From positions 1-64,000 of the IMG/VR virus record IMGVR_UViG_3300042261_002385: a stretch of DNA of 64,000 nt. One strand, 5' to 3'. Numbering within the stretch: position 1 is the first letter of the stretch; each line of letters begins with the position of its first letter. A model generated the notes under the pieces. The model searched no databases. It was not told where the DNA came from and worked only from the letters and a program-made list of their open reading frames with translations. Both the position numbers and the translations under genes were made by a program. Below are positions 24,441 through 63,945 of the stretch, in pieces.

Positions 24441-25121
24441 TTAATTAATTATTTTTTTTACGTATTTATAAATTGGAGTTTCCATAAACCCCTGTTTTCT
24501 AGCGTATCTATGTGCATAAGTTTGAGAATTTAAATTCAAAGAATCAATTATGAATAAAAAAGAACTCTCAATCAAGTGAGCTTCTTTGGCACATTCTATA
24601 ACTTTGATATAGTCAAAAATATTATCTGTAATATCTCTATTTGGTCTTATAATTCTAAGACCATTAGTTTGAAATTTACTAGTGTCAATTTGAAATCTAT
24701 CATCTTCGTGAACAAAAATATAATCCTGCCCATCGACCAAGTCAAAATAAGTAAATATTTTTTGTTCTCTATCAACATCTCTATCAAGTTTAAAATTAGA
24801 CCATCTAACTTCAAAATCAATTCTGAATTGGTTATAAAAGGATGCATCAAAATTTTCAGATTCCGATGAATACATATTATCAAATCCAACTATTATCACA
24901 TCATTCATATTCTTTGATTGTAAGAAATTGATAACGTCTGAGTCGGTTGGTAATGAGATAATACTTAAATTATTGAGGTCTCTATACATGAATTCAACAC
25001 TTTCTTTATTGTGTGGTTTACAAAACAAAGAAATATTTTCAAATTCACTAGCAAATTTCCTTACTAAACCATTACATATTATATGGTCGCCAAGTCCAAG
25101 ATGATGATAGATGTATTTCAT
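24441..25121 (-). CDS. putative glycosyltransferase-like protein
   Basis: HHLGLGDHIICNG N-terminus, ESSF motif, operon context. Confidence 0.55.
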   Translation of the reverse strand: MKYIYHHLGLGDHIICNGLVRKFASEFENISLFCKPHNKESVEFMYRDLNNLSIISLPTDSDVINFLQSKNMNDVIIVGFDNMYSSESENFDASFYNQFRIDFEVRWSNFKLDRDVDREQKIFTYFDLVDGQDYIFVHEDDRFQIDTSKFQTNGLRIIRPNRDITDNIFDYIKVIECAKEAHLIESSFLFIIDSLNLNSQTYAHRYARKQGFMETPIYKYVKKIIN

Positions 25122-36070: not shown

Positions 36071-36930
36071 AGGTTGAGATTACACCTTTGACGACAGAAC
36101 TTTAGTTGGATTATTGTTTCCCTTCTTATCCACTTCCTTTTGAGAAGTATTCTGTCAGTGACGATTGGTTAGACCAATCACTTCTTGAGTTACTAACTAC
36201 TCTCTACTTATTCCGCTTATTCAATCCTGCCGGACTGATTCGAGATTCGACTCTCTATAATTTTTTCGGTAAAATCACATTGGCCTTTCGAGCTTCAGTG
36301 GCTATGGACATCCCATAACTATGTAGTCACCTTTCATTAGTAACTAGGCGACACTTTCGATTTCTTAATTTTAAATGTTTCCAATTAACAGTTAGAAATT
36401 TAGTGCCTTGTAGATTTGTCGAAGTCGTGGTCACCTCTCAGCTCCCAAAGCTTTTGACCTCAGGAATACTGGACAACTCCGTGTAGTGCCTCCACTACAA
36501 CTCTTTAAGATATCTTCACTACATTTCCCCTGGTAGAGAAAAGAGTGTCAAATAACGACACCACTCGTACATTTGATTGTCTTTCAACTTTAAGACACCT
36601 CTTGAGTTGGATTCCGCAATGATAACAACCGGTGAGTCACTACTTCTTGCAACAATCCTATGGGTTAATCCTGTTCCTCTTCCGAGGTCAACCAAACAAT
36701 CTACAATTGCCTGGTCACAAATCCATTTCATCTACAGTGTTACCCTCGACTAATAAGGTTTTGTGGTGTCCCACTTGCTTACTCGACCTCAAACCCGAAG
36801 GTTTAAGACGCAAACACACTTAGCAATTGTGTTCACTTTATCCCGCTTTCACGGTTTATTTTAAGGACTATAAGCCGCCCTTCTCAACAGTCAGCCGAAA
36901 CCGACTGTTAAAGACTAATATTTCAAAGAA
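36071..36930 (-). ncRNA. large structured ncRNA, GOLLD-like (~860 nt)
   Basis: No credible ORF, GC-enriched, many hairpins; downstream of tRNA-Met; ends GGTGTAATCTCAACC plus a T run; size and tRNA-cluster context fit GOLLD. Confidence 0.65.
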
Positions 36931-36956
36931 CTATGTTCTCCGTTGAGAACTCTTTG

Positions 36957-37029
<73 letters not shown>

Positions 37030-37116: not shown

Positions 37117-37204
37117 TGGGAAAGGAGTGGACTCGAACCACCGAAGATCTATTGAGACCAGTCACATTACTATGTAACTCCATTTGCCGCTCTGGAACTT
37201 CCCC
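37117..37204 (-). tRNA. atypical tRNA-Tyr-type gene with 8-nt anticodon loop (AUAGUAAU)
   Basis: Type II cloverleaf: GGGGAAG/CTTTCCC, A73, variable arm GGTCT-CAAT-AGATC, anticodon stem GTTAC/GTGAC. Confidence 0.75.
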
Positions 37205-47355: not shown

Positions 47356-47745
47356 ATGGAAGAAAAAAAACTACCAGATTCATATGTTCCTGACAGAAGA
47401 CTCAAAGAGTACCCAACCGAATTAGGCTCTCAGAACTTCTCTCCTGATGATATACAATTATTTAAATTAGAAAAAACTAGTAAACTTAAACATCACTTCT
47501 CATCTAAATTCGAAGAAATTCAAAAAGAATATCAAAAATTGATTAAAGAAATTTCAATAAACGAAAGACTTTATTTAGCAAAACATAACTTTGAACCATT
47601 AGCTGGTCACACTTACTTTCTTTATCAAAAAAACAACGAAGAGTTCTTATCTATAATTTCACCAGAAGAATGGAAAAATAGATATACTTATATAGGTAAG
47701 TTTCAATTTTTATCAGATGGTCGTTGGTTAGAAATTGATGACTAA
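47356..47745 (+). CDS. DUF2452-like protein
   Basis: YPTELGS..F and FEPLAGHTYFLY...LSIISPEEW motifs; start reassigned to MEEKK. Confidence 0.7.
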   Translation: MEEKKLPDSYVPDRRLKEYPTELGSQNFSPDDIQLFKLEKTSKLKHHFSSKFEEIQKEYQKLIKEISINERLYLAKHNFEPLAGHTYFLYQKNNEEFLSIISPEEWKNRYTYIGKFQFLSDGRWLEIDD

Positions 47746-47747
47746 TT

Positions 47748-48449
47748 ATGAAAAAAAACATTTTCTGGACTGGTGGATTTGATAGCACATTTAGACTTTT
47801 ACAGATTGTAAATGATATCGAAGTTGAGGAGATTAACATTTTTTATGTTTCTCTCTTAATAGATAATAAAGAATCTTCTAAAGTATCAAGACGTAGTTTA
47901 GACATAGAGCTAAAAACTATGTCAAACATATTATCAGAAATTGATACTACTAAAATTAAATGTTTTACCATAATTGGAAAATCAGAAACACTACTACTCT
48001 GTAATTTAATCTTTAGCTTTGGATTTATGAATTACATCACAAAAGAAGAAGTAATTTACACAGATAAGACTAAAATCAACTTTTTTGATTTATATAGAAA
48101 CAATTTTGTAAATAGACCGATATCACAATATACTTACATATCTCAACTTCTTGAGGAATTAGATATTGAAGCAGAGATATCTTTAGAATTCAATCCTAAC
48201 AACTCTGCTTCCTTCTGGAGTTTGTTGTCTTCAGCCATACAAAATAATAGAATAATAAAAATAAGACCGGAACTTGAAGCTTTTTCAAGATTTCAATTAC
48301 CTATAATTAATCTTACAAAAGAAGATATGCTAGAGATTGCTATAAAAAATGGTTGGGAAAAAATACTTCAGTTGACATGGTCTTGTTGGTATCCAATCGG
48401 TGAAACATCTTGTGAATCTTGTTTTGCTTGTAAAAGACGAGTTCTTTAG
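47748..48449 (+). CDS. QueC-like PP-loop ATPase with C-terminal Zn site
   Basis: FWTGGFDST PP-loop; TWSCWYP....CESCFACKRR. Confidence 0.7.
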   Translation: MKKNIFWTGGFDSTFRLLQIVNDIEVEEINIFYVSLLIDNKESSKVSRRSLDIELKTMSNILSEIDTTKIKCFTIIGKSETLLLCNLIFSFGFMNYITKEEVIYTDKTKINFFDLYRNNFVNRPISQYTYISQLLEELDIEAEISLEFNPNNSASFWSLLSSAIQNNRIIKIRPELEAFSRFQLPIINLTKEDMLEIAIKNGWEKILQLTWSCWYPIGETSCESCFACKRRVL

Positions 48450-48522
48450 TCGGGAAGACAGGACTCGAACCTGCGGCCTGATGGTCCCAAACCACCCGAT
48501 CTACCAACTGATCTACTTCCCG
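48450..48522 (-). tRNA. tRNA-Pro(TGG)
   Basis: Full cloverleaf CGGGAAG/CTTCCCG; loop TTTGGGA. Confidence 0.95.
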
Positions 48523-48531
48523 AAATTTTAG

Positions 48532-48604
48532 CGGACGTGACGGGAGTTGAACCCGCTCCGAACTGCGTGACAGGCAGACATCTTAACCGTTTGACCTCAC
48601 ATCC
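48532..48604 (-). tRNA. tRNA-Asp(GTC)
   Basis: GGATGTG/CACGTCC, G73, loop CTGTCAC; A at position 8. Confidence 0.9.
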
Positions 48605-48621
48605 GTATATCAATTATATTG

Positions 48622-48694
48622 TTGTCCCACAAGGGTTCGAACCTCGACTCTTCTGGACCAAAACCAGACGTGTTGCCAATTACACCATAGGACA
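48622..48694 (-). tRNA. tRNA-Gln(TTG)
   Basis: TGTCCTA/TGGGACA; loop TTTTGGT. Confidence 0.95.
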
Positions 48695-48696
48695 AT

Positions 48697-48729
48697 AAAA
48701 AACCCGATTAGTTTTTGACTAACCGGGTT
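48697..48729 (-). terminator. attenuator terminator directly upstream of tRNA-Gln
   Basis: Minus strand AACCCGGTTAG-TCAAAAA-CTAATCGGGTT-TTTT; one G-U pair works only on the minus strand. Confidence 0.85.
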
Positions 48730-48754
48730 TTACAAATTCGTTTTAATTAAAACA

Positions 48755-48850
48755 TTAACTTATTGTAAAGACATAGTTAGCCATTCTCCCAGGGTCCTGA
48801 TCCTGAGGTTGTGGATTAACTTGTGTAATATTCATTTTAAATGTTTTCAT
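48755..48850 (-). CDS. leader peptide (31 aa) MKTFKMNITQVNPQPQDQDPGRMANYVFTIS
   Basis: Not in track. A-rich Bacteroidota-type start context; promoter AAACAG-N15-TATATA upstream; PQPQDQDP run at 48791-48814. Confidence 0.75.
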   Translation of the reverse strand: MKTFKMNITQVNPQPQDQDPGRMANYVFTIS

Positions 48851-48928
48851 TATTTGTTATATATTGAATTATTATTCTCTGTTTGTCAAATTTATATACA
48901 AAAATACAAAAAAGATTTTAAAATATTT

Positions 48929-50344
48929 CTATTTTCTTATGAAATTTTCATAAGTAGCTAATTTTACTAGTTTAGGTTGTTTTAGATTTCTACACTCTTG
49001 AACAAAATTATCTAATATAATCCAAGTCTCCTGTAATTCTTCAGGATGAAATAATATTCCATATCTACCTAATTTTTTATTAGATATACCTGCAATGGTT
49101 TCACCAAGCATTGCAATATTTTCAAAATCAACAGGAACATTTACTGGGTAGTCGTGAAAACAAAAATTTACTTTCTGCTGTGTCAAGTCAATTCCTTTGA
49201 ATAAAAAATGTTCAGTATCAAAATCAGTCAAGTTGAAAAATCCGCAGTTTAGTTCTCCTCCATCGATACTTCGTCCGTAAAACTTAGCCATAGACTGAAA
49301 TCCATAACACATTGCTAAAATTGGACAGGTAAGAATTTTTAACGCCTCCTCTGAAGCTTCATATTCTGTGTTTGAATCCGGCTTTCTCATACTGTAATCA
49401 GAACCAGTTGATAAAGCACCAATGATGTTATATTCTTGATTATATTTTCTTACTTCTTCAGGTGAACAAGCCGCTTTAAAAGGAATATCTCTGACTCTCA
49501 AATATCTAGCTACTTTAGGAAAATATTTAAATTGAGGTGATTTAGCATTGTTTATAATTAAAAATATATCCTCTTTGTCAGAGTTGGATTCTTTGTATGC
49601 ATTTCCAAACTCAATCAAATCAGAATCATCATTATATAGGTGTTTTGGATTGTCATTTTCATGTTCATAACTTTCGTAGTGCTCATCAAGAAATTTTAAG
49701 TCTTCTGAAGTAATTTTGATACCATGGTCAAAACAATTAAAAAATTTCACCAAGTCTTCTATTGACTCATCAGTAAATCCCCAATGAGTTTCAGGATCAT
49801 ACTTTGAACCAACTGAAGTATAATGAATTACATTAATTTTATTTGGAGCTTCAAGTGTAAACTCAACAGCCATATTGTTACCATAAGTAATATCAACCAA
49901 AAGTTTGATTTGGTCTTCTTCTGTGTGTAGATCTCCTTGGCCAATTTTTGAAAAGTGTATATCAAACTCAAGCATTGCTGGTTCACCATTTTGTAAGGCG
50001 TAGTTAGGGTCTAGAGGTATAGGCTCACCAGAATTTGTAGATTTAGATTGGTCAGCACTATTATAGTAGTATGTAAACTGCACTAATGCATTATCAATAG
50101 AACATTCGTTTTTATCAAATACATATTCTTTTGTTCCAGTAACGTCTGTTAGAGTTAAATCTTTGTTTAACTTCTTTAGATTCGGATTTGAATGGATCGT
50201 GAATGTCTCTGGTAAAAGTTTTTCAAACCAATCTTGTTGAAACATAGAAATTCTACCGTCAATATGAATTGGTTCACCAGCGTGAGGAAGTGATTTATTT
50301 CTATACTCTTTACTGAGACCTTCATATTTTTTAAGATATTTCAT
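48929..50344 (-). CDS. tagged protein (MKYLKKYE) with C-terminal class I glutamine amidotransferase domain
   Basis: PILAMCYGFQ nucleophile elbow and GILFHPE His-Glu; AATATATA at 50350-50357. Confidence 0.8.
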   Translation of the reverse strand: MKYLKKYEGLSKEYRNKSLPHAGEPIHIDGRISMFQQDWFEKLLPETFTIHSNPNLKKLNKDLTLTDVTGTKEYVFDKNECSIDNALVQFTYYYNSADQSKSTNSGEPIPLDPNYALQNGEPAMLEFDIHFSKIGQGDLHTEEDQIKLLVDITYGNNMAVEFTLEAPNKINVIHYTSVGSKYDPETHWGFTDESIEDLVKFFNCFDHGIKITSEDLKFLDEHYESYEHENDNPKHLYNDDSDLIEFGNAYKESNSDKEDIFLIINNAKSPQFKYFPKVARYLRVRDIPFKAACSPEEVRKYNQEYNIIGALSTGSDYSMRKPDSNTEYEASEEALKILTCPILAMCYGFQSMAKFYGRSIDGGELNCGFFNLTDFDTEHFLFKGIDLTQQKVNFCFHDYPVNVPVDFENIAMLGETIAGISNKKLGRYGILFHPEELQETWIILDNFVQECRNLKQPKLVKLATYENFIRK

Positions 50345-50391
50345 AATACTATATATTATTTTTTTATTACGAAATATAATATATTCAATGA

Positions 50392-50811
50392 TTAGAGACC
50401 TAAATTATTTATTTTTTTATTTCTGACATCAGAAAGATTATGTATTGCGTAGACTGAGTTTTTTGTAATAATTATACAATCATCTATAATTTGTTCAACT
50501 TTAGAAGTATACCAACTCGAATTTTTTATAGTAAAAGATTGACCAACTACTGGATCCCCATCTGATAGACCTTTAAGCGTATCCATAAATTGATTACCGA
50601 GCAAAGAACTTCTAAAAACTTGAGGTTTTCCAACAATCGATTTAGATGTTTTTAAGAAACTATATTCATCACAATTCTGTATTAATATAGAAACATAGTA
50701 GTCAAATAATTGTTCTCCATCAGAGACAATCATAATAGTTTTTTTACCAGAACTTGAAACAGCTGGTAAAATATTACCTATTTTTAATATTTCAACTACT
50801 TTGTTCATCAA
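50392..50811 (-). CDS. hypothetical protein; C-terminal RNKKINNL motif
   Basis: 139 aa. Confidence 0.65.
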   Translation of the reverse strand: MMNKVVEILKIGNILPAVSSSGKKTIMIVSDGEQLFDYYVSILIQNCDEYSFLKTSKSIVGKPQVFRSSLLGNQFMDTLKGLSDGDPVVGQSFTIKNSSWYTSKVEQIIDDCIIITKNSVYAIHNLSDVRNKKINNLGL

Positions 50812-63369: not shown

Positions 63370-63458
63370 TGGTACTTCTGGTCGGACTCGAACCGACACG
63401 GACACAATGTCCAAGGGATTTTAAGTCCCTCGCGTGCTACCAATTTCGCCACAGAAGC
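63370..63458 (-). tRNA. tRNA-Leu(TAA), CCA encoded
   Basis: Type II cloverleaf; loop CTTAAAA. Confidence 0.95.
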
Positions 63459-63464
63459 TTGTTG

Positions 63465-63547
63465 TACCCTGGGAGAGACTCGAACTCTCACGCCTTTCGG
63501 CACCAGATCCTAAATCTGGCGTGTGCTACCAATTTCACCACCAAGGT
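63465..63547 (-). tRNA. tRNA-Leu(TAG)
   Basis: Type II cloverleaf; loop TTTAGGA. Confidence 0.95.
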
Positions 63548-63557
63548 AAGTAATTTG

Positions 63558-63631
63558 AGCATCCTGCCAGATTCGAACTGGCGTCTCTGGGTTACAAATC
63601 CAGAATAATTGACCAACTATACGAAGGATGC
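63558..63631 (-). tRNA. tRNA-Thr(TGT)
   Basis: GCATCCT/AGGATGC; loop TTTGTAA; A31-C39 mismatch; weak D stem. Confidence 0.8.
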
Positions 63632-63638
63632 AATTTTG

Positions 63639-63712
63639 AGACACTGGTCGGATTCGAACCGACATACCACAGTTTTGCAGACTGGGACCTAAAGCCATTC
63701 AGACACAGTGTC
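63639..63712 (-). tRNA. tRNA-Cys(GCA)
   Basis: GACACTG/CAGTGTC, U73, loop CTGCAAA. Confidence 0.9.
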
Positions 63713-63718
63713 GTTTTG

Positions 63719-63793
63719 TTGGAATGATAGGACTTGAACCTACGACCTCCACGGTATCAGCGTGGCGCTCTCGACCAACTGAGCTACATTCCA
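63719..63793 (-). tRNA. tRNA-Ile(GAT)
   Basis: TGGAATG/CATTCCA; loop CTGATAC. Confidence 0.92.
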
Positions 63794-63800
63794 ATTTTTG

Positions 63801-63865
63801 AGGTCAGTATGGGTCTCGAACCCATGACTCGCTTGCGTCCCACTATGAAGCCTTTTATAGTGACC
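63801..63865 (-). ncRNA. tRNA-like element with acceptor stem and T arm but no canonical D or anticodon arm
   Basis: GGTCACT/ACTGACC; ATGGG-TTCGAGA-CCCAT; middle region CACTAT/ATAGTG and CGC-AA-GCG. Confidence 0.55.
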
Positions 63866-63874
63866 AACCATTTG

Positions 63875-63945
63875 TACCCCGAAGTGGGTTCGAACCACTG
63901 CCATCTCCATGTAAAAGAGATACGCTACCATTACGCCATCGGGGC
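63875..63945 (-). tRNA. tRNA-Val(TAC)
   Basis: GCCCCGA/TCGGGGT; loop TTTACAT. Confidence 0.9.

What the first reader, a model, noticed from the sequence alone, without database searches (positions are those of the whole stretch)
48450..48890. Leader-peptide attenuator controlling a phage tRNA operon: a PQPQDQDP sensor upstream of tRNA-Gln, -Asp and -Pro
Seen (minus strand, in order): promoter-like AAACAG-N15-TATATA; a 31-codon ORF (48850-48755); an 11-bp terminator hairpin with U-tract (48729-48697); then, within ~2 nt, tRNA-Gln, tRNA-Asp and tRNA-Pro. Codons 13-20 read CCA CAA CCT CAG GAT CAG GAC CCT (P-Q-P-Q-D-Q-D-P), eight consecutive codons for exactly the three amino acids of the downstream tRNAs. 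Codons 23-26 contain TGGCTAACT (48783-48775), which can form 9 bp with the terminator 5' arm GGTTAGTCA (48724-48716), mutually exclusive with the terminator. Established: this is the geometry of trp/his/thr-type ribosome-mediated attenuation. Inference: a ribosome stalled on Q/D/P codons leaves the antiterminator free and transcription reads into the tRNAs, while full translation lets the terminator form. The phage would thus make tRNA-Gln/Asp/Pro on demand when host pools are uncharged, depleted or cut by anticodon nucleases. I know of no described leader-peptide attenuator controlling tRNA genes in a phage.
Basis: partly seen in the sequence, partly recalled or inferred. Interest (0 to 1): 0.95.

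Follow-up and report, generated by a model that had tools for sequence, protein, structure and literature searches.

The report
Leader-peptide attenuator gating phage tRNA genes
A 31-codon mini-gene rich in proline, glutamine and aspartate codons, followed by a transcription stop signal, sits directly in front of a phage's tRNA genes for those three amino acids. Many unrelated copies of the same design in other phages indicate a switch that makes tRNAs only when ribosomes run short of them.

Summary

**The element, minus strand:**
- Conserved upstream boxes.
- A 31-codon ORF (48850-48755) containing the run P-Q-P-Q-D-Q-D-P.
- An intrinsic terminator (48727-48697).
- Two bases later, tRNA-Gln, tRNA-Asp and tRNA-Pro.

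**Homologues.** Forty distinct homologous leader ORFs were found in 634-kb and 642-kb uncultured huge phages and in about 75 metagenome contigs.
- All keep the reading frame, and Pro and Gln codons vary at third positions.
- 97% of the tRNAs in these units are Gln, Asp or Pro.

**Other families with the same architecture.** At least ten further, non-homologous leader families exist. Each is enriched in, or samples, the amino acids of its own downstream tRNAs:
- a Q-run before Gln;
- N/L/T/V/I/C/R before those tRNAs;
- K/H/F/W, S/R, E/Y and I/G/A leaders;
- a "sampler" leader in front of a 13-amino-acid tRNA array;
- three units in the cultured Cellulophaga phage phi4:1.

The true leader-to-tRNA pairing beats 10^6 of 10^6 random pairings.

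**Antiterminator.** In every family a segment just 3' of the codon run pairs with the terminator's 5' arm. It covaries with the terminator in one family.

No description of this was found in the searchable literature. I judge it a new variant of ribosome-mediated attenuation: a feedback control of tRNA supply. It has not been tested experimentally.

The parts
48887..48894 (-). TAAATTTG, a Bacteroidetes-type -7 promoter box (TAnnTTTG); likely host-sigma promoter of the leader-tRNA operon
   Evidence: One search gives its position. On its own the motif is not enriched in the window (113 found against 101 expected). A TAnnTTTG box lies 44-60 nt upstream of the leader ATG in 38 of 39 unique homologous upstream regions. 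It is also present in 7 of 7 NLT leaders and in the KHF, SR and sampler leaders.
48858..48865 (-). AATATATA gene-start motif, 7 nt before the leader ATG (a phage promoter element or a translation-initiation signal; undecided)
   Evidence: 12 of 17 occurrences in the window lie 4-19 nt before the ATG of an ORF of at least 50 aa, against 6.5% at random positions. The leader is a 13th case. The longer motif TAATATATA occurs 10 times against 2.6 expected. A related motif is present before leaders of all families.
48755..48850 (-). Leader ORF: 31 codons plus a TAA stop
   Evidence: There are 40 unique homologous ORFs of 27-35 codons, all in frame, with the stop 19-33 nt before the terminator. Pro columns vary only at the third position (CCG/CCT/CCA/CCC) and Gln columns use CAA/CAG. 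Summed entropy by codon position is 20.3 / 19.7 / 27.1.
48791..48814 (-). Regulatory codon run, codons 13-20: Pro-Gln-Pro-Gln-Asp-Gln-Asp-Pro
   Evidence: It is the only {P,Q,D} run of 8 or more in the six-frame translation, with none in 100 shuffles. The run is conserved in homologues.
48812..48824 (-). Segment 1 (anti-antiterminator strand), pairing with segment 2 in the untranslated leader
   Evidence: in the minimum-energy fold of the leader, nt 27-39 pair with nt 68-80, enclosing a small hairpin (48807-48802 with 48793-48788) formed by the codon run itself. A comparable 1:2 pairing is predicted in 28 of the 38 homologues that show the antiterminator. No covariation test was done.
48771..48783 (-). 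Segment 2. Its first 9 nt (TGGCTAACT, 48783-48775) are the antiterminator strand that pairs with the terminator's 5' arm
   Evidence: with the 3' arm removed, the fold has 48783-48775 paired to 48724-48716 (-16.5 kcal/mol for 48785-48712, z = -3.4). The same pairing is predicted in 38 of 44 homologues. The G(C/A)T-AAC-T codons have low third-position entropy, which points to an RNA constraint. In the window alone the complementarity is not significant (p = 0.2).
48697..48727 (-). Intrinsic terminator: 10-bp stem (48727-48718 with 48712-48703), 5-nt loop, T6 tract (48702-48697)
   Evidence: the only terminator-like site in 47500-50500.: -17.8 kcal/mol, z = -6.2. Against LR745206.1 there is one G-C to A-T compensatory pair and two G-C/G-U switches.
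48621..48694 (-). tRNA-Gln (anticodon TTG), first regulated gene; starts 2 nt after the T tract
   Evidence: ARAGORN; Rfam, 61 bits.
48531..48604 (-). tRNA-Asp (anticodon GTC)
   Evidence: 50.7 bits.
48449..48522 (-). tRNA-Pro (anticodon TGG)
   Evidence: 65.2 bits.
63370..63945 (-). Distal part of a second attenuated tRNA operon (Val, Ile, Cys, Thr, Leu, Leu). Its leader and terminator lie beyond the window's end
   Evidence: One search lists the tRNAs; locus L091, from the window's own contig, shows an N/L/T/V/I/C/R-rich leader and a terminator about 1 kb upstream of these tRNAs.

Best explanation
This is a ribosome-mediated (leader-peptide) transcription attenuator that gates a phage tRNA operon.

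**Proposed mechanism**
1. Transcription starts upstream of the 31-codon leader.
2. If nobody translates the leader, or the ribosome runs through it quickly, segment 1 (48824-48812) pairs with segment 2 (48783-48771). The terminator hairpin (48727-48703, followed by its T tract) then forms, and RNA polymerase stops 2 nt before tRNA-Gln.
3. If aminoacyl-tRNA-Pro, -Gln or -Asp is scarce, the ribosome stalls in codons 13-20. It holds segment 1 apart from segment 2.
4. Segment 2 then pairs with the terminator's 5' arm. The terminator cannot form, and polymerase reads into tRNA-Gln, tRNA-Asp and tRNA-Pro. Processing then releases the tRNAs from the transcript.
5. The result is negative feedback: decoding capacity for a codon family sets the synthesis of the tRNAs that read it.

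**Wider pattern**
- The same design, with different codon runs and unrelated terminator sequences, gates most other tRNA operons of this phage group.
- Some gates are nested inside an operon. For example, a Gln-only leader lies in front of the distal Gln tRNAs.
- The design also occurs in other Bacteroidota phages.

**What is shown and what is inferred**
- Shown: the anatomy, the conservation, the coding signature, the codon-tRNA correspondence, and the alternative pairings.
- Inferred: that the leader is translated, that the hairpin terminates, and the direction of the response.
For: **Anatomy.** (see the observation check).

**Homologues.**
- LR745206.1 has a homologous leader with 6 synonymous and 8 non-synonymous codon differences, and one compensated pair in the terminator stem.
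- The metagenome scan gave about 75 loci. They hold 40 unique leader ORFs, all in frame, with third-position variation at Pro and Gln codons.

**tRNA content of the units.**
- P/Q/D leaders: Asp 84, Pro 61, Gln 51, other 6.
- Q leaders: Gln 56 of 56.
- N/L/T leaders: only Leu, Asn, Thr, Arg, Val, Ile, Cys and Met.

**Independent families.**, including three units in the cultured Cellulophaga phage phi4:1.

**Statistics on leader-tRNA matching.**
- With 7 families, the true pairing is the best of 5040 permutations.
- With 11 families, 0 of 10^6 random pairings reach the true score. The same holds without the finding's own family.
- The sampler leader covers 13 of the 13 amino acids of its array and has no D, E, G or A. 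The simulated probability is 4e-6.

**Codon-level match.**
- Arg is AGA where tRNA-Arg(tct) follows, and CGC/CGA where tRNA-Arg(acg) follows.
- Ile is ATA where tRNA-Ile(tat) follows, and ATT/ATC where tRNA-Ile(gat) follows.

**Antiterminator.**
- In every family it lies 1-6 codons after the codon run. The Fisher combined p over 8 families is 1.4e-6.
- In the N/L/T family one member has a different terminator and a matching change in the leader segment. The alignment tool reports 4 of 12 pairs with compensatory changes.

**No internal promoter.** The T tract lies 2-38 nt (median 9) from the first tRNA.

**Upstream signals.** The promoter box and the gene-start motif are conserved upstream.

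**Lineage specificity.** T5 and a 735-kb phage have no terminator within 60 nt upstream of any tRNA.
Against: - No experimental data of any kind exist: no transcript ends, no ribosome footprints, no reporter assays.
- In the window alone the antiterminator complementarity is not significant (p about 0.2). An alternative partner for the 5' arm, GGACCCTGGGA at codons 18-22, has slightly better duplex energy.
- The P/Q/D homologues were collected with a pattern that fixed most of the terminator. Covariation of terminator and antiterminator therefore cannot be assessed in this family.
- The whole-peptide enrichment is modest for several families (E/Y p = 0.12, I/G/A 0.08, sampler 0.06, P/Q/D 0.013).
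- A ribosome sitting at the stop codon would not cover segment 2. Termination after full translation therefore relies on re-formation of the 1:2 pairing or on timing, and neither is shown.
- Some leader codons have no matching tRNA in the unit. Examples are AGT Ser codons in the S/R leader and Val-Val-Ile in one P/Q/D subfamily.
- Transcription-translation coupling in the presumed Bacteroidota hosts is assumed, not known to me.
Confidence: 0.85

Rival explanations
1. Ordinary terminator plus an unrelated small gene. The hairpin simply ends the upstream transcription unit. The 31-codon ORF encodes a small protein, or nothing at all. The tRNAs are made by constitutive leak-through, and the P/Q/D run is a coincidence.
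For: - Small ORFs are common in AT-rich phage DNA.
- The antiterminator is not significant in the window alone.
- Whole-peptide enrichment of P/Q/D is only p = 0.013.
Against: - The coincidence would have to recur in at least 10 other unrelated leader families, each matching its own tRNAs. No random pairing in 10^6 does as well.
- The ORF, its frame and its stop position are kept in 40 unique homologues.
- An antiterminator lies in the same relative place in every family.
- The leader has its own conserved promoter box downstream of the upstream gene.
Confidence: 0.04
2. RNA-only sensor (T-box-like). The leader RNA binds tRNAs directly through its codon-like triplets and switches the terminator without being translated.
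For: - T-box leaders do control translation-related genes by antitermination in response to uncharged tRNA (established knowledge).
- The codon runs would offer several specifier triplets.
Against: - No T-box or other Rfam family matches at E up to 1.
- The ATG, the frame and the stop are conserved. Indels come in multiples of three. Pro codons use all four third bases.
- The leader carries the same gene-start motif as 12 protein genes.
- The leaders are 80-120 nt long, far shorter than T-box leaders.
- There is no conserved UGGN bulge: segment 2 starts with UGG, GUG, AGG or GGG in different homologues.
Confidence: 0.04
3. Coupling-type attenuator with the opposite logic (pyrBI-like). A ribosome that translates the leader efficiently follows the polymerase and physically prevents the terminator hairpin from forming. 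Good tRNA supply would then give more tRNA transcription, and stalling would give termination.
For: - A translated leader directly upstream of a terminator is also the geometry of pyrBI-type control (established knowledge).
- The direction of the response has not been measured here.
Against: - The leader's stop codon lies 27 nt before the terminator's 5' arm in the window (19-33 nt's measure across the family). A terminating ribosome therefore cannot reach the hairpin.
- A conserved segment able to pair with the 5' arm lies just after the codon run in all families. That segment is needed only in the stall-gives-read-through model.
- Runs of cognate codons make no sense as a sensor under positive feedback.
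Confidence: 0.05

Closest known systems
Leader-peptide attenuators of amino-acid biosynthetic operons (trp, his, leu, thr, ilv, pheA of enterobacteria; related ones in Actinobacteria)
   Same: - A short translated leader with a run of regulatory codons.
- Three overlapping pairings: 1:2, 2:3 (antiterminator) and 3:4 (intrinsic terminator).
- A stalled ribosome selects the antiterminator.
- Multi-amino-acid leaders exist there as well: thr (Thr and Ile) and ilv (Ile, Leu, Val).
   Different: - The regulated genes here are tRNA genes, not biosynthetic enzymes. The loop therefore senses and corrects tRNA supply rather than amino-acid supply.
- The element is viral.
- Some gates are nested inside one operon.
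- One family uses a "sampler" leader with about one codon for each of 13 tRNA species.
- There is no sequence homology to known leaders.
Leader-peptide control of aminoacyl-tRNA synthetase genes (E. coli pheST; leuS, trpS, alaS and thrS leaders reported in Streptomyces lividans, PMC8079986)
   Same: Ribosome stalling at cognate codons controls a component of the translation apparatus that serves that same codon family.
   Different: - The target there is the charging enzyme. Here it is the tRNA itself.
- Those are single-amino-acid leaders in cellular genomes.
T-box riboswitches
   Same: They sense the state of a specific tRNA and switch between a terminator and an antiterminator upstream of translation-related genes.
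   Different: - T-box leaders act by direct RNA-tRNA binding, without translation, and have conserved Stem I and T-box motifs.
- None of these is present here.
- T-box leaders are not known to me upstream of tRNA genes.
tRNA gene clusters of phages T4 and T5
   Same: They are polycistronic phage tRNA arrays with small ORFs and stable RNAs interspersed (T5 annotation).
   Different: - In T5 the record annotates promoters rather than terminators in front of the tRNAs.
- My scan finds no terminator within 60 nt upstream of any of its 23 tRNAs.
- No codon-matched leaders are known there.

Membership tests
Ribosome-mediated (leader-peptide) transcription attenuator | A short ORF with a credible start in the 5' leader of the regulated transcript | tested here: met
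   - ORF at 48850-48755.
- 40 unique in-frame homologues with third-position variation.
- The gene-start motif AATATATA lies 7 nt upstream, as for 12 ordinary genes.
- Translation itself has not been observed.
Ribosome-mediated (leader-peptide) transcription attenuator | The leader is enriched in codons that report on the regulated product | tested here: met
   - Eight consecutive P/Q/D codons precede tRNA-Gln, -Asp and -Pro.
- Across 11 families the true pairing beats 10^6 of 10^6 random pairings.
- The match extends to codon level for Arg and Ile.
Ribosome-mediated (leader-peptide) transcription attenuator | An intrinsic terminator between the leader ORF and the regulated genes, with no promoter after it | tested here: met
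   - Hairpin of -17.8 kcal/mol (z = -6.2) followed by T6.
- A compensatory pair against LR745206.1.
- A 2-nt gap to tRNA-Gln; the median gap is 9 nt in 84 units.
Ribosome-mediated (leader-peptide) transcription attenuator | An antiterminator pairing (2:3) that is mutually exclusive with the terminator and lies just downstream of the regulatory codons | tested here: met
   - Window: 48783-48775 pairs with 48724-48716 in the truncated fold, but p = 0.2 on its own.
- Predicted in 38 of 44 homologues.
- Present in all other families, with p between 0.001 and 0.056 and a Fisher combined p of 1.4e-6.
- Covariation in the N/L/T family.
Ribosome-mediated (leader-peptide) transcription attenuator | An anti-antiterminator pairing (1:2) that a ribosome stalled on the regulatory codons would disrupt | tested here: inconclusive
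   - Predicted in the window's minimum-energy fold: 48824-48812 with 48783-48771, enclosing the codon run.
- Predicted in 28 of the 38 homologues that show the antiterminator.
- The leader-only fold is not better than shuffles (z = -0.5).
- No covariation test was made.
Ribosome-mediated (leader-peptide) transcription attenuator | Read-through responds to the supply of the cognate charged tRNA | not testable with these tools
   This needs reporter assays, Term-seq or in vitro transcription-translation.
T-box riboswitch | Stem I with a specifier loop, and a conserved T-box sequence in the antiterminator (matching Rfam RF00230) | tested here: not met
   Rfam cmscan at E up to 1 over 47500-50000 found only the three tRNAs and one chance snoRNA-like hit.
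Coupling-type attenuator (pyrBI-like) | The leader ORF extends to or into the terminator, so that a translating ribosome blocks the hairpin | tested here: not met
   The stop codon (48757-48755) lies 27 nt before the 5' arm (48727); one search's measure is 19-33 nt in the homologues.
Independent tRNA transcription unit behind an ordinary terminator | A promoter between the terminator and the first tRNA | tested here: not met
   - Only 2 nt separate the T tract from tRNA-Gln.
- No conserved TAnnTTTG box lies inside the leader's 3' part in the homologues (by inspection).
- By contrast, the window's unattenuated tRNAs at 37204 and 37029 each have a TATCTTTG box.

The most novel reading that the evidence does not exclude
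These phages may carry a complete, codon-resolved tRNA homeostat.

- Essentially every elongator-tRNA operon would be gated by its own leader peptide.
- Gates can be nested, for example a P/Q/D gate followed by a Gln-only gate.
- In phages with one large tRNA array, a single "sampler" leader would poll about one codon per tRNA species.
- The ribosome itself would report which decoding capacities are short, and the phage would top up exactly those tRNAs.

The design appears to have arisen or diversified repeatedly in Bacteroidota phages, from 145 kb to more than 600 kb. It may have been selected because hosts deplete or cleave tRNAs during infection.
Probability: 0.5. Interest if true: 0.95.

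Novelty: new variant of a known kind. Interest (0 to 1): 0.9.

Why it matters
- **What phage tRNAs are for.** This has been debated for 50 years: codon compensation, or replacement of tRNAs lost to host shut-off or to tRNA-cleaving defences. A sensor that turns tRNA genes on only when ribosomes stall at the matching codons would show that the phage treats tRNA supply as a limiting, monitored quantity. It would also make the question directly testable, by asking which perturbation opens which gate.
- **A new target for attenuation.** It would be the first case known to me of leader-peptide attenuation acting on tRNA genes. That closes a feedback loop that cells are not known to close in this way.
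- **Annotation.** It explains dozens of unannotated or "hypothetical" mini-ORFs inside phage tRNA arrays. It also gives a simple signature for annotating them.
- **A natural parts set.** The families together supply compact sensors of about 150 nt covering all 20 amino acids, for bacteria of the Bacteroidota.
- **An available test system.** The cultured pair Cellulophaga baltica and phage phi4:1 carries three such units, so experiments are possible now.

Tried and rejected
- **IMG/VR scans for the P/Q/D leader.** The degenerate leader pattern and the T-tract/tRNA-Gln junction returned only the window's own contig.
- **tblastn of the upstream 471-aa protein.** It found only the two huge-phage records. 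Synteny with the leader holds in one of them only.
- **blastn of the sampler and N/L/T leaders against GenBank phages.** No cultured homologue was found. phi4:1 was found only indirectly, through tRNA similarity.
- **Rfam.** No family matches the leader.
- **The sigma-70-type promoter scan.**
- **TAnnTTTG as a stand-alone signal.** It is not enriched in the window. Only its positional conservation counts.
- **Covariation of the terminator and antiterminator in the P/Q/D family.** This was not attempted, because my search pattern fixed those bases.
- **An internal promoter overlapping the leader's 3' end.** Some homologues have a TTTG 7-10 nt before the hairpin. I rejected it because the TA of the box is missing, it is not conserved across subfamilies, and a start there would still include the whole hairpin.
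- **Number of Gln codons versus position of the Gln tRNAs.** I looked for a link within the P/Q/D family and saw no clear trend. There is only an anecdote: two leaders with a single Gln codon have no Gln tRNA in the 0.75-1.1 kb available.
- **Literature.** Eight completed full-text searches of the held library found no description. Most subscription journals are not covered.
Full report
**1. The observation**

All features lie on the minus strand, in this order.
- The 471-aa gene ends at 48929.
- Then come a TAAATTTG box (48894-48887) and an AATATATA motif (48865-48858).
- Then comes an ATG-initiated ORF of 31 codons (48850-48755). Its codons 13-20 read Pro-Gln-Pro-Gln-Asp-Gln-Asp-Pro (48814-48791).
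- After 27 nt of spacer comes a hairpin: a 10-bp stem (48727-48718 with 48712-48703) and a 5-nt loop, followed by six T (48702-48697).
- Two bases later come tRNA-Gln(ttg), tRNA-Asp(gtc) and tRNA-Pro(tgg).

The hairpin is the only terminator-like site in 47500-50500. It folds at -17.8 kcal/mol, z = -6.2.

The P/Q/D run is the only run of 8 or more such residues in the six-frame translation of the whole window. None occurred in 100 dinucleotide shuffles.

**2. Structures in the window**

- The full leader's minimum-energy fold (-34.7 kcal/mol, z = -3.7) has two parts.
  - One is the terminator.
  - The other is a long-range helix between 48824-48812 (segment 1) and 48783-48771 (segment 2). It encloses a small hairpin formed by the codon run itself.
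- When the terminator's 3' arm is left out, as it is before polymerase has made it, segment 2 pairs instead with the 5' arm. This is 48783-48775 with 48724-48716. The fold of 48785-48712 is -16.5 kcal/mol, z = -3.4.
- This is the 1:2, 2:3, 3:4 layout of the trp attenuator.
- Caveats:
  - The leader-only fold is no better than shuffles (z = -0.5).
  - A plain duplex search finds the 2:3 complementarity unremarkable for this one sequence (p about 0.2).

**3. Homologues of this leader**

- The 634,780-bp uncultured phage LR745206.1 has the same unit.
  - The two leaders differ at 14 codons, 6 of them synonymous.
  - Four of the synonymous differences lie within the N-P-Q-P-Q-D-Q-D-P stretch.
  - The terminator stem carries one G-C to A-T compensated pair.
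- One scan of metagenome contigs with the terminator as pattern returned 78 loci, mostly from freshwater lakes and sludge.
  - About 75 of them have a 27-35-codon ORF ending 19-33 nt before the hairpin.
  - In those with enough downstream DNA, tRNAs follow.
  - Two loci without a leader or tRNAs are chance pattern hits.
- Among 40 unique ORFs, every one is in frame.
  - Pro columns use all four CCN codons. Third-position entropy there is 1.55-1.74 bits, against less than 0.85 at positions 1 and 2.
  - Gln columns use CAA and CAG.
  - The codons that make up segment 2 are constrained at third positions as well. That fits an RNA-level role.
- In 48 units the tRNAs up to the next terminator are Asp 84, Pro 61, Gln 51 and other 6.
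- The tRNA identity was not part of the search, so this is an independent result.

**4. The decisive test: other leaders and other tRNAs**

I looked upstream of every terminator that lies within 40 nt of a tRNA in the fetched loci. This revealed further, non-homologous families.
- A Gln-run leader (5-7 Gln in 14-21 codons) precedes two to four tRNA-Gln genes: 21 units, Gln 56 of 56. It usually sits directly after a tRNA and has no promoter box of its own, so it is an internal gate.
- An N/L/M/T/V/I/C/R leader precedes Asn, Arg, Leu, Val, Ile, Thr, Cys and Met tRNAs (7 loci).
- A K/H/F/S/W leader precedes Lys, His, Phe and Trp tRNAs.
- An S/R leader precedes Arg(acg) and Ser tRNAs.
- An E/Y/G leader precedes Glu and Tyr tRNAs.
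- An I/G/A leader precedes Ile(tat), Gly and Ala tRNAs.

Three further results extend this.
- The window's own contig, read beyond the window's end, carries the N/L/T-type leader. It lies in front of the cluster whose distal part is at 63370-63945.
- A different group of IMG/VR phage contigs has a "sampler" leader.
  - It contains all 13 amino acids of the tRNA array that follows it.
  - It contains none of D, E, G or A, whose tRNAs lie more than 5 kb away.
  - The simulated probability of both is 4e-6.
- The cultured Cellulophaga phage phi4:1 has three such units. Two are unannotated and one overlaps the "hypothetical" gp075.
  - A Q/R/L/H/E/P leader precedes Pro, Glu, Gln, His, Leu, Leu and Arg.
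  - A T/K/G/I/V/D/A/R leader precedes Ala, Lys, Ile, Gly, Met, Asp, Thr, Val and Arg.
  - An N/Y/S/W/F leader precedes Tyr, Ser, Asn, Trp and Phe.

**5. Statistics**

- I scored each leader (whole peptide minus Met1) against each tRNA set, as a z-score relative to the amino-acid usage of 112 long ORFs.
- With 7 families the true pairing is the best of all 5040 permutations.
- With 11 families no random pairing in 10^6 reaches it. The same holds when the finding's own family is removed.
- Own set scores best for 8 of 11 leaders.
- The match extends to codons.
  - Arg is AGA (10 of 10) where tRNA-Arg(tct) follows. It is CGC/CGA where tRNA-Arg(acg) follows.
  - Ile is ATA (3 of 3) where tRNA-Ile(tat) follows. 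It is ATT/ATC (17 of 17) where tRNA-Ile(gat) follows.

**6. The antiterminator across families**

- Each family has its own terminator sequence. In each, a leader segment 1-6 codons after the codon run is complementary to the terminator's 5' arm.
- The p values against 1000 dinucleotide shuffles are 0.001-0.056 for the other families and 0.2 for the window. The Fisher combined p over 8 families is 1.4e-6.
- In the N/L/T family six members pair CTGAGGGTT with AACCCTCAG. One member, with a different terminator, pairs GTTCGGGTT with AACCCGAAC, and this changes the encoded peptide.
- The alignment tool reports a 12-pair helix with 4 compensated pairs.
- For the Gln family the consensus fold also picks the antiterminator, with one compensated pair.
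- Minimum-energy folds of RNAs truncated before the 3' arm contain the antiterminator in 38 of 44 P/Q/D sequences, 16 of 19 Gln sequences and 6 of 7 N/L/T sequences.

**7. Transcription and translation signals**

- A TAnnTTTG box, the -7 element of Bacteroidetes promoters by established knowledge, lies 44-60 nt before the ATG in 38 of 39 P/Q/D upstream regions. It is also present in all N/L/T, K/H/F, S/R and sampler leaders.
- 14 of 18 Gln leaders lack the box and directly follow a tRNA.
- The motif alone is not enriched in the window. Its positional conservation is the evidence.
- AATATATA lies 4-19 nt before the ATG of 12 ORFs of at least 50 aa in the window, and 7 nt before the leader's ATG. 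The leader therefore looks like a normal gene start to this phage.
- The T tract is 2-38 nt (median 9) from the first tRNA in 84 units. No promoter fits there.
- The window's two unattenuated tRNAs (37204 and 37029) instead have their own TATCTTTG boxes and no leader.

**8. Mechanism and its weak points**

The best explanation is trp-type attenuation with tRNA genes as the output.
- A stall in the run keeps segment 1 away from segment 2.
- Segment 2 then captures the 5' arm, and polymerase reads into the tRNAs.
- Stalls with the A site on codons 13-19 leave segment 2 fully clear of a ribosome's leading edge. This is my estimate from known footprint sizes.

Three points are not settled.
- It is unclear how termination is ensured after full translation, because a ribosome at the stop codon would not cover segment 2.
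- It is unclear which upstream element is the promoter.
- It is unknown whether transcription and translation are coupled in the host.

The host is probably a member of the Bacteroidota.
- The promoter type points that way.
- The 634-kb and 642-kb genomes of Al-Shayeb et al. [quoted passage not shown] I identify LR745206.1 and LR756502.1 with those genomes by length only.

**9. Rivals**

- **Chance plus an ordinary terminator.** This is excluded by the replication across families.
- **A T-box-like RNA sensor.** This is contradicted by the coding signature, the gene-start motif and the absence of any Rfam match.
- **A pyrBI-like coupling attenuator with opposite logic.** This is contradicted by the 19-33-nt gap between stop codon and hairpin, and by the conserved antiterminator.

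**10. Comparison with what is known, and novelty**

- The mechanism class is classical.
- Leader peptides are also known in front of aminoacyl-tRNA synthetase genes. Examples are E. coli pheST, from my own knowledge, and leuS, trpS, alaS and thrS in Streptomyces (PMC8079986).
- I found no report of a leader-peptide attenuator in front of tRNA genes, in phages or in cells, in eight completed full-text searches. The huge-phage paper does not mention one.
- The arrangement is lineage-specific. Phage T5 (23 tRNAs) and a region of the 735-kb phage (16 tRNAs) have no terminator within 60 nt upstream of any tRNA.
- I classify the element as a new variant of a known kind. It is of high interest for three reasons.
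  - It gives a direct functional read-out of why phages carry tRNAs.
  - It is widespread.
  - It can be tested at once in a cultured phage-host pair.

Noticed in passing
window 36071-36481 (-): A full-length GOLLD RNA (Rfam RF02032, 294 bits, E = 4e-83) lies about 475 nt downstream of tRNA-Met. It is a large structured RNA of unknown function, encoded here by a huge phage next to tRNA genes.
   Followed up: no
window 37118-37204 (-): ARAGORN calls an 87-nt "tRNA-???" with a four-base anticodon (agta), which implies an 8-nt anticodon loop. It does not reach Rfam's tRNA gathering score. It has its own TATCTTTG box (37226-37219) and no leader. It may be an unusual or decayed tRNA.
   Followed up: no
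window 36956-37029 (-), box at 37075-37068: tRNA-Met(cat) has its own TATCTTTG promoter box and no leader or terminator. By eye, positions 1 and 72 are mismatched (C:U), as in initiator tRNAs. An initiator could not be sensed by elongation stalling, which would fit its being ungated. This was not tested.
   Followed up: partly
window, 17 sites (for example 50357, 39924, 53056, 9867): The 8-mer AATATATA lies 4-19 nt before the ATG of 12 ORFs of at least 50 aa, against 6.5% for random positions. It is either a phage-specific promoter element giving near-leaderless mRNAs or a translation-initiation signal.
   Followed up: partly
window 63794-63873 (-): The 80-nt spacer between tRNA-Val and tRNA-Ile has a T-arm-like GGTTCGAGACC stretch, but neither ARAGORN nor Rfam calls it a tRNA. 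Similar tRNA-like spacers occur in the LR745206.1 and LR756502.1 arrays.
   Followed up: no
window 47748-48449 (+) and 50344-48929 (-): A QueC-like ORF (Pfam PF06508; only the C-terminal part matches) converges on tRNA-Pro and ends at its last base. The 471-aa gene upstream of the leader has a class-I glutamine amidotransferase domain in its C-terminal third. Its N-terminal 200 aa are shared with the two huge phages.
   Followed up: partly
P/Q/D leader family (window 48802-48794 and homologues): - The codons GAT-CAG-GAT are invariant even at third positions in 37-40 of 40 unique leaders, unlike the neighbouring Pro and Gln codons.
- One subfamily inserts Val-Val-Ile codons that form a 9-bp hairpin with the following Asp-Pro-Asp-Thr codons, yet no Val or Ile tRNA follows.
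- The stretch may be a pause hairpin or GATC sites. It remains unexplained.
   Followed up: partly
L004 about 24530-24930 (minus strand; LR756502.1): An ORF of about 65 aa is inserted between the N/L/T-type terminator and the first tRNA-Asn. In this genome a protein gene therefore appears to have come under the tRNA attenuator's control.
   Followed up: no
L093 (Cellulophaga phage phi4:1, NC_021788.1: 87065-87189, about 87989-88160, 89771-89920): - Three leader-plus-terminator units lie inside the tRNA array of a cultured phage.
- Two are unannotated. One overlaps the "hypothetical protein" gp075, with a probable GTG start.
- The TATGTTTG box lies only 4 nt before the first leader's ATG, which suggests a leaderless mRNA.
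   Followed up: partly
window about 61440-61340 (-): Three runs of 6-7 consecutive proline codons lie in one reading frame.
   Followed up: no
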